Origin: Salpingoeca rosetta
Taxonomy: Eukaryota; Protista; Choanoflagellata
NCBI GenBank assembly: GCA_033442325.1
Contig: JAWQFM010000007.1
Coordinates: forward strand, 228,735-292,734
DNA length: 64,000 nt
Direction: 5' to 3'
Below the pieces are notes generated by a model that searched no databases, was not told the DNA's origin, and saw nothing but the letters and a program-made list of their open reading frames with translations. Of the stretch, positions 34,209 to 39,497 are shown piece by piece (within the stretch, counting starts at the first letter, position 1; each line of letters begins with the position of its first letter). The position numbers and the translations under genes were made by a program.

Positions 34209-37200
34209 TCACATTTTCACGGGAGAGACGCCAACCTTGTTGGAAGCGCTGCGGTTAGCACGGTGCTTGAACAACACAACAAGGGCAACAACAACACCAA
34301 TAAACACAATGCCGCCAACGGCACCACCAGTCAAAACGCCAGGTGGCACGCCTCCCTTCCTTGGACGGGGATGGCCACCACCGCCATCCGTGGTGGTCGG
34401 AAACGGGGTTGAGGGGCCATCTGGAGGGCGCGGCACAGCGTGTACTTGAACGGCGCCAATCAGCATGACGTCGTCTGTGGTGGCGCTGCCGGTGTAGATG
34501 GCCACCTCCTTTGCCAGCCGGCCCTCCACCACCGCGGCCTCAAGCGCAGCCTGCACCGCGTACCCGTCGCTGCTCTCCGCGTTCACCTCAAGCTCAACCC
34601 CGGCCGTGGCGTTGCCCAGCCGCTCCGCAGCCATCGCGCTCGCCCCAACTACACGCATCGCCGACGGCACAAACGACGCCCGCCCAACAGCAAGGCTCGT
34701 CGCCTCCGCAAACTGCGCCGCGTCCATCGTCGTGCTCGGGCGTCCGCGCAGCCCAACACGGAACACAACCGTGTCCAGCGGGCCAGTGGGGCCAGGCGCA
34801 GTGCTGTTCGTGTCGTTACCGCTGTGCACCATGTCCACACCTCCAAGGAAGATGTTAATCCCTCCATCGCCGCCATCGCCGCCATCGCCATCATCAACAC
34901 TGCCAACAGAGGCCGCGGCTACCGGCAGCTTGGCTGCATCGTACTCCTCCGCACACTGCACCGTGCACGCAACGTACGCCTCCCGCCAGCACGTGTCCAC
35001 GCTGTCCTGCCCCCAGCGAAGGCACCGCCGCAGGTCGTCGTTGCAGCACCGCGCACACTCGTGCGCACCAGCCGTGCACACCACGTCCGACGGCTGGCAG
35101 CTGCACCGCCGCGTGTCCTCGTTCCAGAAACACCGGTTGTCCGCGCTCCGCGCCACCGTCGTCAGGCACGACGTGTGCTCGTTGCACAGCTGCTGCCGCC
35201 CCGCGTCAGACGCCTTGAAGAAGTTCACCTGCTCACACGTCACAGGCAGCGGCCGGCACGCCCCCGTGTACGCAACCTTCACCCCGGCACACCGCGCGTG
35301 GCACACAGACGCATACGTCTGCCAGTCCTCGCCGCACGCCTTGGCCGCCATCCCCTCCGGCGGGCACAGCCGCTCGCACGCAACGCACAGCCCCCCGTAC
35401 GCAATCTTCACCCCAGCCTCCCGCGCATAGCACACGTTGTCGTACGTCTGCCCGTCCTCCCCGCACACATACGTCTGGCCCTGCGCAGCGCACGAGTCCG
35501 GCTCAACATCGCACGTCACCGGCTCGCCCGTCTCAGGGTCGCTCCACTCCACCTCGCACCCGCCGCAGGGGCTCGTCTCGCACACGGCCTCCGGGTTGGC
35601 CTCGCACGTCGCATACGCGCACGGGTCAAACGTGCACGTGCCCTCCTCCACCGGGCACGTCGAGTAGCAGCGCGCACGCGACCCGTCCTCCCGGTAGAAC
35701 TCGGGCCGGCACCGTCCGCAGGGGTTCACCCAGCACGTAGCGTCCGGCGACCCGGGGCACGTCGCATTCGCACAGGGGTTCCACTCGCAGTTCTGCCGCG
35801 GCAAGCCGGGCGGGCACTGGTAGTCGTCGCCCGGCCGCCAGCTGTCGTCCTGCCGCAGCGTCAGGTCGTCCGCCGCAAAGCACAGGTCCTCCAGGATCGA
35901 CGGCTGCGACTGCGTCCTGTCCCGCTGCCACTCGTCCGGCTGCCTCACCAGCGCCTCCTCGAGGTACGCCTCGTACGCATCCATGATCGCCCCGTACAGC
36001 CCGCCGCGCGACATCCACATGGACGCCTTCCACCACGCCGGCAGCGGCTGCAGTGGGCTGCACGTGCGCGCGGGCTGCACATATGCGTTGGCCTGGATGC
36101 GCCGGTACAGCTCCCGCTGCGCCTGGAACACGTCGCGCATGTACAGCGGCATCGGATGCATGATGCTGCACCCGCGGCTGTCCACTCCGGCCGTGTTGAA
36201 CCCCGTCGCAGTGACCCCGCCAACACGCACCCCATCCCGGTTCCGCCCAAGCTTGTCCAGTCCATTCTCATCATATCCATCCCTGTCGTAGCCGTCGCGG
36301 TCGTACTGCGGCCGGGCACCGGGTGCGTAGTACCCCTTTGTCTCAAACGTGCCGCCAAAGAGCGCCTCGTTGCAGGGCGGCGTGCGGCCAGGCGGCTCGT
36401 ACACCACGCACAGCTGGCCCTCGCTGTCAAGCACGTCTGCCGGCGTCTTGGGAAACGGATCCATCGTGTTGTGCAGCAGCTCTTCAGGGTACTTATTGCC
36501 GTTTCCGAGCACGACTTGCCAGTCGTACCACTGCTTGTCGACGTATGCGTGATGTAAATAGAAGACAGGGTCATAGGGTGCAGAATAAGTGGACATGAGG
36601 CCACGAATCCAAGTGTGTGTGTTGCCATGGATGCCCTCGAGTCGCGTCGCCATCGTGCGGAAATCATCGTTGGACAGCACGTTGGTCACGTCTGCAAAGG
36701 AAGGTATGTGCCAAGACCGATCCCAGTCTCGGCTGATGCACGGGCTGAATGTCGCAAACGGGCCATCTTCAATGCACTGATTCTCACCGGTACCGTCGCC
36801 ACCCACGAGATTCCACACAGGCGAGGTCTCGGGCGAGCTGCTGTCGATTGTCCAGTCCCAGTAGGGCAGCGTGAAATCGCAGTTGCCAGTCACCTCCCGC
36901 AGCGCAAGTTCTAGTTGATTCATGTATTCTCGGTGCCAGGGGAGGAAACTTGGGTTGCCGTGTGCTGAAGCAGATGCGCTCAGGTGCATGTTGACAAACT
37001 CGTTCCACCTGTTGCCACTGTTGTACAAGCGCCAGATGGCGTCAATGTACGTCTGCACCTCGTCAAGCGTCAGGTCCCTTATCTCACGGCGCCGCCGCGG
37101 CGTGCACTGGCACGTCACCGCCCCGTCTGTCCCGCACACGCACCACTGGCAGGCGAAGCGGAACGTCTCGCCGTAGTTGTACCGCCGGCCCTGGTAGATG

Positions 37201-39497: not shown

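What the first reader, a model, noticed from the sequence alone, without database searches (positions are those of the whole stretch)
34209..39497. Unusual architecture: a tyrosinase bracketed by Kunitz, VWC and Kazal domains and membrane-anchored
Seen order: signal - mucin - IPT/TIG-like (PRVYGIDPPCG...AIVCAVP) - Cys repeat - Kunitz (GQCKG, P1 Lys, i.e. trypsin-type by Kunitz convention) - GYD repeats - VWC-like (CIYQGRRYNYGETF..CQWCVC..G.VTC) - tyrosinase with all 6 His - GYD repeats - two CxxxPCxxATC...PCGxC repeats - two Kazal - Cys domain - putative SEA-like region - TM - short tail. Known: vertebrate TYR has only a Cys-rich domain plus TM, and nematode tyrosinases carry ShK domains. I do not know a characterised protein with this combination. 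Inference: a protease-shielded or protease-regulated surface phenoloxidase.
Basis: partly seen in the sequence, partly recalled or inferred. Interest (0 to 1): 0.8.

Follow-up and report, generated by a model that had tools for sequence, protein, structure and literature searches.

The report
Choanoflagellate membrane tyrosinase with inhibitor domains
This is a real, transcribed gene of the choanoflagellate Salpingoeca rosetta for a large cell-surface protein that joins a copper tyrosinase to Kunitz and Kazal-like modules. Its tyrosinase cassette is shared with the kielin/chordin-like proteins of animals, where the copper site has decayed.

Summary
The minus-strand ORF 34209-39497 is Salpingoeca rosetta gene PTSG_11343. 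Its public model is truncated at the N-terminus and skips the gap.

The assembly gap is continuous and in frame. Contigs from two other studies bridge it with exactly 220 letters, and RNA reads run into both edges.

Pfam confirms Kunitz (P1 Lys), tyrosinase with all six copper histidines, and two Kazal-like modules. The IPT/TIG, half-VWC and SEA-like labels have only weaker support.

The architecture is uncharacterised but not unique. S. rosetta has four to five paralogs, one of them inverted in this window. Hartaetosiga balthica and S. urceolata have collinear orthologs.

The new point is a conserved cassette: half-VWC, tyrosinase, Gly-Tyr-Asp repeats, helical extension. It also sits inside animal "kielin/chordin-like" giants from mollusc to shark, and every copy examined there lacks at least two copper histidines.

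Two paralogs are thecate-cell-enriched in published tables.

Best reading: a type I surface phenoloxidase acting on the extracellular coat. The inhibitor role is untested.

The scan had flagged a paralog elsewhere in this genome (s1-431422).

The parts
34209..39497 (-). Complete coding sequence of S. rosetta PTSG_11343. It is a single exon as far as tested, about 1762 codons including 74 in the gap, with the stop at 34209-34211.
   Evidence: ORF. 100% match to NCBI PTSG_11343. No splice joints in RNA reads over 34000-38900.
39375..39497 (-). Signal peptide (41 residues, ends AHA).
   Evidence: Hydropathy window 2.76 at residues 15-40; translation. Cleavage site is inferred.
38724..39374 (-). 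Thr/Ser/Pro-rich mucin-like region, including a run of about 50 Thr encoded by a triplet repeat.
   Evidence: Translation. This region is absent from the paralog.
38271..38723 (-). IPT/TIG-like module. It is a repeat unit present in 3-5 copies in homologs.
   Evidence: No direct Pfam hit. It aligns to the S. urceolata region that holds TIG_plexin at 3e-14. Weak TIG hit at 4e-4 in paralog P0003.
37878..38270 (-). Cys-rich region. It begins with a first copy of the C..C..P.A.C....CG.C...FY module and continues with a further Cys-rich stretch.
   Evidence: Sequence. No Pfam family. Conserved in choanoflagellate homologs.
37722..37874 (-). Kunitz/BPTI domain with six Cys and P1 Lys.
   Evidence: Pfam E 2e-20, 73 bits; pattern and P1.
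37461..37700 (-). First Gly-Tyr-Asp pentapeptide repeat tract. It continues into the gap.
   Evidence: 9 motif copies, mostly 5 residues apart.
37241..37460 (-). Assembly gap. The true length is 220 bases and the frame is kept. It encodes more repeats and a Cys-rich linker, as in the paralog.
   Evidence: Contigs X1 record 5 and X3 record 11 bridge it with 220 letters. RNA loose ends at both edges translate to the paralog's residues. The paralog has 220 bases here.
37101..37238 (-). Half-VWC / FnI-like beta-hairpin module, directly fused to the tyrosinase.
   Evidence: FnI_RECK 6.6e-5 and VWC2L 0.012, both sub-threshold. Six short strands with pLDDT about 90. The homologous module in Ptychodera matches Pfam VWC positions 1-32 at 1.5e-5.
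36363..37100 (-). Type-3 copper (tyrosinase) core with all six His ligands.
   Evidence: Pfam 9e-35. His check. pLDDT above 95. VIA Z 28.4 to B. megaterium tyrosinase.
36171..36362 (-). Second Gly-Tyr-Asp repeat tract, predicted disordered.
   Evidence: 4 motif copies. pLDDT below 50. Conserved in metazoan relatives.
35874..36170 (-). Helical C-terminal extension of the tyrosinase cassette, with conserved motifs GC, P.Y, R.C.P...P.WW.
   Evidence: pLDDT 90-95, helices 365-382 and 413-432. It aligns with helices of mollusc hemocyanin units. Pairwise E 1e-16 to amphioxus and 3e-11 to Limulus together with the repeats.
35511..35819 (-). Two further copies of the six-Cys module. No family assigned.
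   Evidence: Sequence. No Pfam or Atlas hit.
35256..35510 (-). Two Kazal-like modules.
   Evidence: Kazal_2 4.5e-11 in 2 stretches; Kazal_1 1.8e-6.
34941..35255 (-). Cys-rich domain with no assigned family.
   Evidence: No Pfam or Atlas hit. Conserved in homologs.
34434..34781 (-). Membrane-adjacent ferredoxin-like (SEA-compatible) domain.
   Evidence: AF2 beta-alpha-beta-beta-alpha-beta, core pLDDT about 80. VIA Z 8.3 to S6, 7.9 to the Gpr126 SEA region, 6.3 to TMPRSS6 SEA. There is no GSVVV motif.
34269..34337 (-). Transmembrane helix, followed by a 19-residue tail (34212-34268).
   Evidence: Hydropathy 2.82; translation.
18603..23364 (+). Inverted paralog PTSG_11341 with the same architecture but without the mucin region.
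   Evidence: tblastn. DNA is 99-100% identical to 11343 except the N-terminus, the catalytic domain (71-91%) and the TM/tail. There is a 1-base indel in Kazal-2.

Best explanation
The locus is the S. rosetta gene PTSG_11343.

Shown: it encodes one continuous protein of about 1,760 residues in a type I membrane arrangement. The order is: signal peptide, Thr-rich mucin, one IPT/TIG-like module, Cys modules, a Kunitz domain, Gly-Tyr-Asp repeats, a conserved cassette, two Cys modules, two Kazal-like modules, a Cys-rich domain, a ferredoxin-like membrane-adjacent domain, a membrane span and a short tail. The cassette is: half-VWC module, bacterial/mollusc-type di-copper tyrosinase, Gly-Tyr-Asp repeats, helical extension. 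The gene is transcribed from the minus strand.

Inferred: the tyrosinase is catalytically competent, because all six copper ligands and the fold are kept. It therefore acts as a phenoloxidase displayed on the cell surface. It would oxidise tyrosines or catechols of the cell's extracellular coat (theca, stalk, matrix), and possibly its own repeats, to cross-link or harden that coat. The Kunitz domain (P1 Lys) would block trypsin-like proteases near the enzyme.

The cassette was inherited from the common ancestor of choanoflagellates and animals, not taken from bacteria.
For: Identity: 100% match to PTSG_11343, with paralogs.

Continuity across the gap: two independent contigs carry exactly 220 letters there. 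RNA reads enter both edges with the paralog's residues, and the paralog's length is also 220.

Transcription: stranded reads cover 34000-38900, including copy-specific parts, and show no splice joints.

Domains.

Catalytic competence:
- Six His present.
- AF2 pLDDT 83.6 and pTM 0.83.
- Z 28.4, rmsd 1.8 A, 34% identity to B. megaterium tyrosinase.
- PDB sequence E 1e-29 to Streptomyces tyrosinase.

Topology: signal plus one C-terminal span, conserved in all full-length choanoflagellate homologs.

Vertical origin:
- Choanoflagellate clade support 100/99 and metazoan clade 100/99. Their union has 85/62 (80 rows) and 97 SH-aLRT (167 rows).
- The flanks are shared as well: the half-VWC module, the repeats and the helical extension.
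- The gene is not among the published HGT candidates.

Role in the coat: paralogs PTSG_12389/12390 and PTSG_06045 have 5- to 100-fold higher FPKM in thecate cells than in colonies (PMC4054682 supplementary tables).
Against: - No enzymatic, copper-binding or localisation data exist.
- The residue after the first CuB histidine is Gly, not the Asn that some models tie to monophenolase activity (my recollection of that literature). The enzyme could therefore be a catechol oxidase only.
- Every animal relative examined and two choanoflagellate relatives have lost copper ligands yet keep the cassette and the repeats. The conserved role of the cassette may therefore not be catalysis.
- Expression data by cell type were found only for paralogs, not for this gene. 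Reads specific to this copy are few, at 1-5x depth.
- Kunitz P1 is not conserved among orthologs, and the Kazal-like P1 residues are atypical.
Confidence: 0.55

Rival explanations
1. The protein is mainly a non-catalytic surface scaffold, adhesion or ligand-binding receptor, or a multi-headed protease inhibitor. In this view the tyrosinase-like cassette serves as a binding module, as it must in the animal relatives.
For: All 23 tyrosinase-like domains of 19 animal relatives, and two choanoflagellate relatives, lack two or more copper histidines. They still keep the half-VWC module, the repeats and the helical extension. NCBI names one paralog 'protease inhibitor'. IPT/TIG, VWC-type and mucin modules are typical of receptors and matrix proteins (my knowledge).
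Against: This gene and six other choanoflagellate members keep all six histidines and a near-ideal tyrosinase core. That is hard to explain without selection for copper binding. The catalytic domain is also the one part that escapes homogenisation between the two local copies.
Confidence: 0.25
2. It is a defence or prey-handling phenoloxidase. The surface enzyme would make quinones against bacteria, while the inhibitor modules blunt bacterial proteases. This would be functionally analogous to invertebrate phenoloxidase systems.
For: S. rosetta lives on bacteria and responds to them (PMC4054682). The Kunitz P1 residue varies between orthologs (K/R/D/S), as expected for inhibitors facing changing proteases (inference). 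The catalytic domains of the two local copies have diverged while their flanks are kept identical.
Against: There is no direct evidence. The paralogs' expression follows cell type (thecate versus colony) within the same culture and prey, not the bacterial regime. No activating protease or zymogen-type plug was seen in the model. The C-terminal helices align with core helices of hemocyanin units rather than forming a cap.
Confidence: 0.15
3. The architecture is an artefact: two neighbouring genes were read as one across the assembly gap, or one reading frame was joined by chance.
For: The public model treats the gap as an intron and starts downstream. By chance alone, one gap in three would keep the frame.
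Against: Two independent contigs bridge the gap with exactly 220 letters. RNA reads cross into it from both sides with coding sequence identical to the paralog's. The ungapped paralog and orthologs in three other sources are collinear across this point.
Confidence: 0.02

Closest known systems
Bacterial short tyrosinases (Bacillus/Priestia megaterium TyrBm, Streptomyces MelC2)
   Same: The catalytic core is the same: six His, about 250 residues, 34-38% identity. VIA Z is 28.4 and 26.7 at rmsd 1.7-1.8 A; PDB sequence E is 1e-29.
   Different: Those are small soluble enzymes, and Streptomyces needs a caddie protein. Here the core is embedded in a 1,760-residue membrane glycoprotein. It is preceded by a half-VWC module and followed by repeats and a helical extension. 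The residue after the first CuB His is Gly rather than Asn.
Animal membrane tyrosinases (TYR, TYRP1; the 'gamma' subclass of Aguilera et al. 2013, PMC3658974)
   Same: Both have a signal peptide, a Cys-rich module N-terminal to the copper domain, a single C-terminal membrane span and a short tail. The TYRP1 alignment reaches into the N-terminal Cys module (model residues 1-3 onward, Z about 25, rmsd 4.6 A).
   Different: Sequence affinity is far lower: E 3e-7, CuA region only. The tree places this domain with the kielin/chordin-like clade, so membrane anchoring arose separately. TYR has no Kunitz, Kazal, IPT or mucin modules and acts in melanosomes.
Animal 'kielin/chordin-like' giants carrying tyrosinase-like domains (Lingula, Argonauta, Limulus, crinoid, amphioxus, shark, teleosts) and the Ptychodera VWC+Kunitz+EGF+tyrosinase protein
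   Same: They share the whole cassette: half-VWC, tyrosinase fold, LC..Y..P...PCN, Gly-Tyr/Phe-Asp/Asn repeats and the helical extension. They form the sister clade. Ptychodera also has Kunitz domains.
   Different: In animals the cassette lies among 20-30 VWC repeats plus a VWD domain, and no membrane span was detected in the one checked (Ptychodera). Every copy examined lacks at least two copper histidines. These proteins have been mentioned only in passing as outliers (PMC11667028).
Mussel and tubeworm adhesive tyrosinases with DOPA proteins
   Same: Both involve a secreted alpha-type tyrosinase acting on Tyr-rich extracellular proteins to harden or glue an external structure. A Mytilus tyrosinase is among the eukaryotic hits.
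   Different: Those enzymes are separate soluble proteins and their substrates are separate proteins. Here the enzyme, the Tyr-bearing repeats and the inhibitor modules are on one membrane-anchored chain. DOPA has not been shown in S. rosetta.
Arthropod prophenoloxidase cascade
   Same: The idea is shared: phenoloxidase activity kept in check by serine-protease inhibitors.
   Different: Arthropod enzymes are cytosolic-type hemocyanin relatives activated by clip proteases, and their inhibitors are separate proteins. No zymogen plug or activation site was identified here.

Membership tests
Type-3 copper protein / tyrosinase (PF00264) | Pfam score above the gathering threshold | tested here: met
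   121 bits against a cut-off of 22.6, E 9e-35.
Type-3 copper protein / tyrosinase (PF00264) | Six histidine copper ligands (three CuA, three CuB) | tested here: met
   H85, H93, H102, H204, H208 and H230 are all present in a 100-sequence alignment.
Type-3 copper protein / tyrosinase (PF00264) | Four-helix-bundle tyrosinase fold | tested here: met
   AF2 core pLDDT above 95. Z 28.4, rmsd 1.8 A over 236 residues to 6ei4.
Type-3 copper protein / tyrosinase (PF00264) | Copper binding and mono- or diphenol oxidation | not testable with these tools
   This needs protein and assays. Gly after the first CuB His leaves monophenolase activity open.
Membrane-bound 'gamma' tyrosinases of animals (TYR/TYRP) | Phylogenetic grouping with TYR/TYRP | tested here: not met
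   TYRP1 scores E 3e-7, against 1e-29 for Streptomyces tyrosinase. The domain groups with the kielin/chordin-like clade. No gamma reference sequences were in the tree itself.
Membrane-bound 'gamma' tyrosinases of animals (TYR/TYRP) | Signal peptide, Cys-rich region and one C-terminal membrane span | tested here: met
   Hydropathy and sequence. This is a resemblance of layout only.
Kunitz/BPTI inhibitors (PF00014) | Pfam score, six Cys in the canonical spacing, basic P1 | tested here: met
   73 bits against 21. Pattern C-8-C-15-C-7-C-12-C-3-C with Lys after the second Cys.
Kunitz/BPTI inhibitors (PF00014) | Inhibition of a serine protease | not testable with these tools
   P1 varies among orthologs: K, R, D, S.
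Kazal inhibitors (PF07648/PF00050) | Pfam score above threshold | tested here: met
   Kazal_2 43 bits against 22.8, in two stretches. Kazal_1 28 bits against 21.
Kazal inhibitors (PF07648/PF00050) | Six Cys and a canonical reactive-site loop | tested here: inconclusive
   The second module has six Cys but a 9-residue loop with Pro at the conventional P1. The first module lacks the C1/C5 pair and has Ala at P1 (read).
VWC / chordin-type Cys-rich repeat (PF00093) | Full ten-Cys domain scoring above threshold | tested here: not met
   Only the first half is present. FnI_RECK 23.6 bits against 30, and VWC2L positions 1-33 of 55 at 0.012. The Ptychodera homolog matches VWC positions 1-32 of 57 with 25.7 bits against 27.6.
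IPT/TIG (PF01833, PF17960) | Pfam match over the module | tested here: inconclusive
   There is no hit in this protein even at E 10. The aligned module of S. urceolata scores TIG_plexin 3e-14, and paralog P0003 scores TIG 4e-4.
SEA domain (PF01390) | Alpha/beta sandwich next to the membrane | tested here: inconclusive
   The fold is beta-alpha-beta-beta-alpha-beta. SEA regions of Gpr126 (Z 7.9) and TMPRSS6 (Z 6.3) tie with many unrelated ferredoxin-like folds. The Atlas SEA cluster scores only 0.80.
SEA domain (PF01390) | G/SVVV autoproteolysis motif | tested here: not met
   The motif is absent. Homologs carry RR-x-RR in the equivalent loop; this gene has AERLGNAT.
Kielin/chordin-like proteins | Arrays of VWC repeats plus a C-terminal VWD domain | tested here: not met
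   There are no VWC arrays and no VWD in the S. rosetta protein. Only the tyrosinase cassette is shared.

The most novel reading that the evidence does not exclude
The cassette 'half-VWC, tyrosinase, Gly-Tyr-Asp repeats, helical extension' is an ancestral module of choanoflagellates plus animals. In choanoflagellates it would still be an active surface phenoloxidase that builds or glues the theca, perhaps using its own Tyr repeats as substrate. In animals it would have lost its copper and become a pseudo-enzyme core of kielin/chordin-like proteins. If so, membrane-anchored type-3 copper enzymes existed outside animals, and a domain of a BMP-modulator-like family descends from an oxidase.
Probability: 0.35. 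Interest if true: 0.8.

Novelty: new variant of a known kind. Interest (0 to 1): 0.62.

Why it matters
The standard account of type-3 copper proteins (PMC3658974) found none in the choanoflagellate and filasterean genomes it examined. It treated the membrane-bound form as an animal invention. This gene family shows that close relatives of animals have membrane-anchored tyrosinases with intact copper sites.

The same cassette survives, catalytically decayed, inside kielin/chordin-like proteins from molluscs to sharks. That gives a concrete, testable case of an enzyme turning into a matrix or signalling module at the origin of animals.

S. rosetta can be gene-edited, by my recollection. If so, the proposed role in theca building or attachment can be tested directly.

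The result also corrects the public gene model, which is truncated at the N-terminus and wrongly spliced over a gap.

Tried and rejected
I laid 34000-38900 instead, as the tool advised, so the 5' 600 bases are untested.
- The word-based protein search found the architecture only in S. rosetta. The exhaustive HMMER search was needed to find other choanoflagellates and the animal clade.
- The Cys modules and the Cys-rich domain gave no Pfam hit at E 10 and no Atlas hit.
- Foldseek found nothing for the SEA-like model. The wide structural search gave only generic ferredoxin-like matches.
- Horizontal transfer from bacteria was considered, because the best solved and short hits are bacterial or zoopagomycete. 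It was rejected because of the animal sister clade with shared flanks, and because the gene is absent from the published HGT list.
- A C-terminal plug or caddie-like cap was considered for the helical extension. It was rejected provisionally because these helices align with core helices of mollusc hemocyanin units. Model coordinates could not be inspected.
- Expression of PTSG_11343 itself by cell type was not found in the stored, truncated supplementary tables.
- The stored file captions of PMC4054682 seem shifted by one against their contents, so I relied on the column headers inside the tables.
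Full report
**Identity and gene model.**
The window is from Salpingoeca rosetta. The minus-strand ORF 34209-39608 matches NCBI 'hypothetical protein PTSG_11343' at 100% over the shared parts.

The public model (P0001, 1320 aa) starts at 38459 and treats the assembly gap as an intron. The open frame continues upstream to an ATG at 39497. That ATG is followed by a signal-like hydrophobic segment and a Thr-rich region of about 217 residues. 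The part of the frame upstream of that ATG is a CA/GT microsatellite and is not taken as coding.

**The gap, tested first.**
- The N run at 37241-37460 is 220 letters long.
- Contigs of two runs from different studies (X1 record 5, X3 record 11) span it with exactly 220 letters of their own.
- RNA reads overhang both edges. Translated on the minus strand, the overhangs read FEYLEEQMYD at the upstream edge and FVRGVACGDR at the downstream edge. The ungapped paralog has the same residues there.
- The paralog has exactly 220 bases between the same flanks.
- With the two bases of a split codon this makes 74 codons, so the two sides are continuous and in frame.
- The flanks are 99-100% identical between the two local copies. 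This probably caused the gap. It also means the bridging contig may be the collapsed form of both copies. Its depth is about twice that of the copy-specific contig next to it (128.6 against 72.5), and it does not branch at the gap edges.

**Transcription.**
Two stranded RNA runs cover 34000-38900 at 1-20x. The first mate lies almost only on the plus strand, which for most stranded libraries means a minus-strand RNA.
- Copy-specific stretches are covered at about 1-5x: the catalytic domain around 36450-37000, the 3' end, and 38545-38900 upstream of the annotated start.
- No splice joint was seen.
- Some loose ends carry the sequence of the paralog PTSG_11341 (at 34456) and of PTSG_06045 (at 36400). 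Those genes are therefore expressed too.

**Domains.**

| Module | Result |
|---|---|
| Kunitz | Pfam E 2e-20; six Cys; Lys after the second Cys |
| Tyrosinase | Pfam E 9e-35 |
| Two Kazal-like modules | Kazal_2 E 4.5e-11 when scanned alone |
| 'VWC-like' piece | Only the first half of such a module (FnI_RECK 6.6e-5, VWC2L 0.012); six short strands at pLDDT about 90 |
| IPT/TIG | No Pfam hit in this protein; the aligned S. urceolata module scores TIG_plexin 3e-14; unit repeated 3-5 times in homologs |
| Membrane-adjacent region | Folds as beta-alpha-beta-beta-alpha-beta; structural matches generic (S6 Z 8.3; Gpr126 SEA region Z 7.9); no GSVVV motif |
| Three six-Cys modules and a Cys-rich domain | No family found |
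| Gly-[YFLM]-[DNS] motif | 13 copies, all in two tracts flanking the half-VWC-plus-tyrosinase unit, mostly 5 residues apart; shuffles give 3.6 +/- 1.8 |

By the usual convention the Kazal P1 residues are Ala and Pro. The first Kazal-like module lacks two Cys (read).

**The catalytic domain.**
All six copper histidines are present. With a 100-sequence alignment, AlphaFold gives pLDDT 83.6 and pTM 0.83 for residues 1-470 of the post-gap piece:
- The core scores above 95.
- The second repeat tract is disordered.
- A helical extension (365-440) scores 90-95.

The core superposes on Bacillus megaterium tyrosinase with Z 28.4, rmsd 1.8 A and 34% identity. On Streptomyces tyrosinase the Z is 26.7. 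Sequence E-values are 1e-29 for Streptomyces and 3e-7 for human TYRP1. The core is therefore of the bacterial/mollusc ('alpha') type, not the animal membrane ('gamma') type.

The extension's helices align with core helices of mollusc hemocyanin units, so I do not read the extension as a plug. The residue after the first CuB histidine is Gly. From memory of the literature, Asn there has been linked to monophenolase activity, but this is debated.

**Relatives.**
S. rosetta has further members:
- PTSG_11341, in this window at 18603-23364 on the plus strand.
- PTSG_06045, named 'protease inhibitor'.
- PTSG_12389 plus the adjacent Kazal gene PTSG_12390, probably one gene split in two.
- 'Mantle protein 9'.

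The exhaustive search added collinear proteins of 2,400-2,800 residues from Hartaetosiga balthica, S. urceolata and two unnamed sources. All have Kunitz, then tyrosinase, and a C-terminal membrane span. Only some show Kazal hits (P0172, P0173); none was found for Hartaetosiga or S. urceolata at the threshold used.

Next in the list come animal proteins annotated 'kielin/chordin-like'. They come from Lingula, Argonauta, Limulus, a crinoid, amphioxus, a shark and teleosts. One or two tyrosinase-like domains lie among 20-30 VWC repeats and a VWD domain. A Ptychodera protein has VWC, two Kunitz domains, EGF and two such tyrosinase-like domains.

Trees of the tyrosinase domain give the following support:

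| Group | Careful tree, 80 rows (UFBoot/SH-aLRT) | Quick tree, 167 rows (SH-aLRT) |
|---|---|---|
| Choanoflagellate clade | 100/99 | 99 |
| Animal clade | 100/99 | 97 |
| Union of the two | 85/62 | 97 |

The stronger argument is the shared flanks. The animal matches begin inside the half-VWC module. They continue through LC..Y..P...PCN, the Gly-Tyr/Phe-Asp/Asn repeats and the extension with R.C.P...P.WW. The post-catalytic part alone gives E 1e-16 to amphioxus and 3e-11 to Limulus.

All 23 tyrosinase-like domains in the 19 animal proteins checked lack at least two copper histidines. Mytilus P0011 and one further protein from outside the clade (P0278) keep six. Among the choanoflagellates, seven of the nine members in which all six positions could be scored keep all six. 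'Mantle protein 9' and Hartaetosiga do not.

**Function.**
The supplementary tables of the S. rosetta genome paper (PMC4054682) use the column order ThA, ThM, ThAM, SwM, then colonies.

| Gene | Thecate FPKM | Swimmer FPKM | Colony FPKM |
|---|---|---|---|
| PTSG_12389 | 23-190 | 35 | 0.5-6.3 |
| PTSG_06045 | 6.6-38 | 8.5 | 0.8-3.6 |

Both genes are listed among the genes up in attached and swimming cells. Thecate cells secrete the theca by which they attach.

Together with the intact copper site and the type I topology, this makes a coat-modifying surface phenoloxidase the best reading. The Tyr-bearing repeats on the same chain are a possible substrate. However, their conservation in the copper-less animal proteins shows they have some role that does not need catalysis.

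The inhibitor idea rests only on domain identity.

**Literature and novelty.**
- No paper in the library mentions these gene ids.
- None combines tyrosinase, Kunitz and choanoflagellate.
- Aguilera et al. 2013 found no type-3 copper protein in Monosiga or Capsaspora, did not examine S. rosetta, and took the membrane form to be animal-only.
- A 2024 study of spiralian tyrosinases mentions sequences over 3,000 residues long with kielin/chordin-like domains only as outliers.
- The domain combination is visible in automatic annotation. It is therefore uncharacterised rather than unseen.

**Limits.**
- There is no biochemical evidence.
- Taxon names are known for only part of the hits.
- No gamma or beta reference sequences were in the trees.
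- Model coordinates could not be inspected.
- Support for the union clade is moderate.
- Cell-type expression is known only for paralogs.

Noticed in passing
window 18603-23364 (+) versus 34209-39497 (-): The two convergent copies (PTSG_11341 and PTSG_11343) are 99-100% identical in DNA over most of their length. They drop to 71-91% across the tyrosinase catalytic domain, and they are unrelated at the N-terminus (mucin only in 11343) and at the TM/tail. This looks like gene conversion that spares the catalytic part.
   Followed up: partly
window about 22264-22291 (paralog PTSG_11341): The paralog has a 1-base indel relative to this gene inside the second Kazal-like module. The public model removes about 25 residues there as an intron. 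It is either a real frameshift or an assembly error.
   Followed up: no
P0176, P0179, P0180, P0183, P0190, P0199, P0326 (animal proteins): Kielin/chordin-like proteins of many animal phyla, including shark and teleosts, contain one or two tyrosinase-like domains with decayed copper sites plus Gly-Tyr/Phe-Asp/Asn repeats. I found this noted only in passing in one paper.
   Followed up: partly
alignment A2; window about 34560-34600: In most homologs the loop between strands 2 and 3 of the membrane-adjacent domain carries a dibasic cluster (RR-x-RR-A). This is the position where SEA domains self-cleave. This gene and its local paralog have AERLGNA/T there instead. It may be a convertase site that was lost here.
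   Followed up: no
window 38953-39056: A triplet repeat encodes a run of about 50 threonines in the mucin region. It is long enough to block read laying and is likely to vary in length between strains.
   Followed up: no
window 36400 and 34456 (loose ends of RNA reads): Reads from the paralogs PTSG_06045 and PTSG_11341 lay partly on this gene, so both are transcribed in the same RNA samples.
   Followed up: partly
PMC4054682 supplementary files as stored: The captions attached to the stored files appear to be shifted by one against their contents. The file captioned 'read counts and FPKM' holds the clustering sheets. The file captioned 'upregulated in colonial cells' lists genes that are high in thecate samples.
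   Followed up: partly
PTSG_12389 / PTSG_12390 (another contig): The adjacent models 'Kunitz + tyrosinase' and 'Kazal' have parallel expression. Together they probably make one gene of this family that was split by annotation.
   Followed up: no
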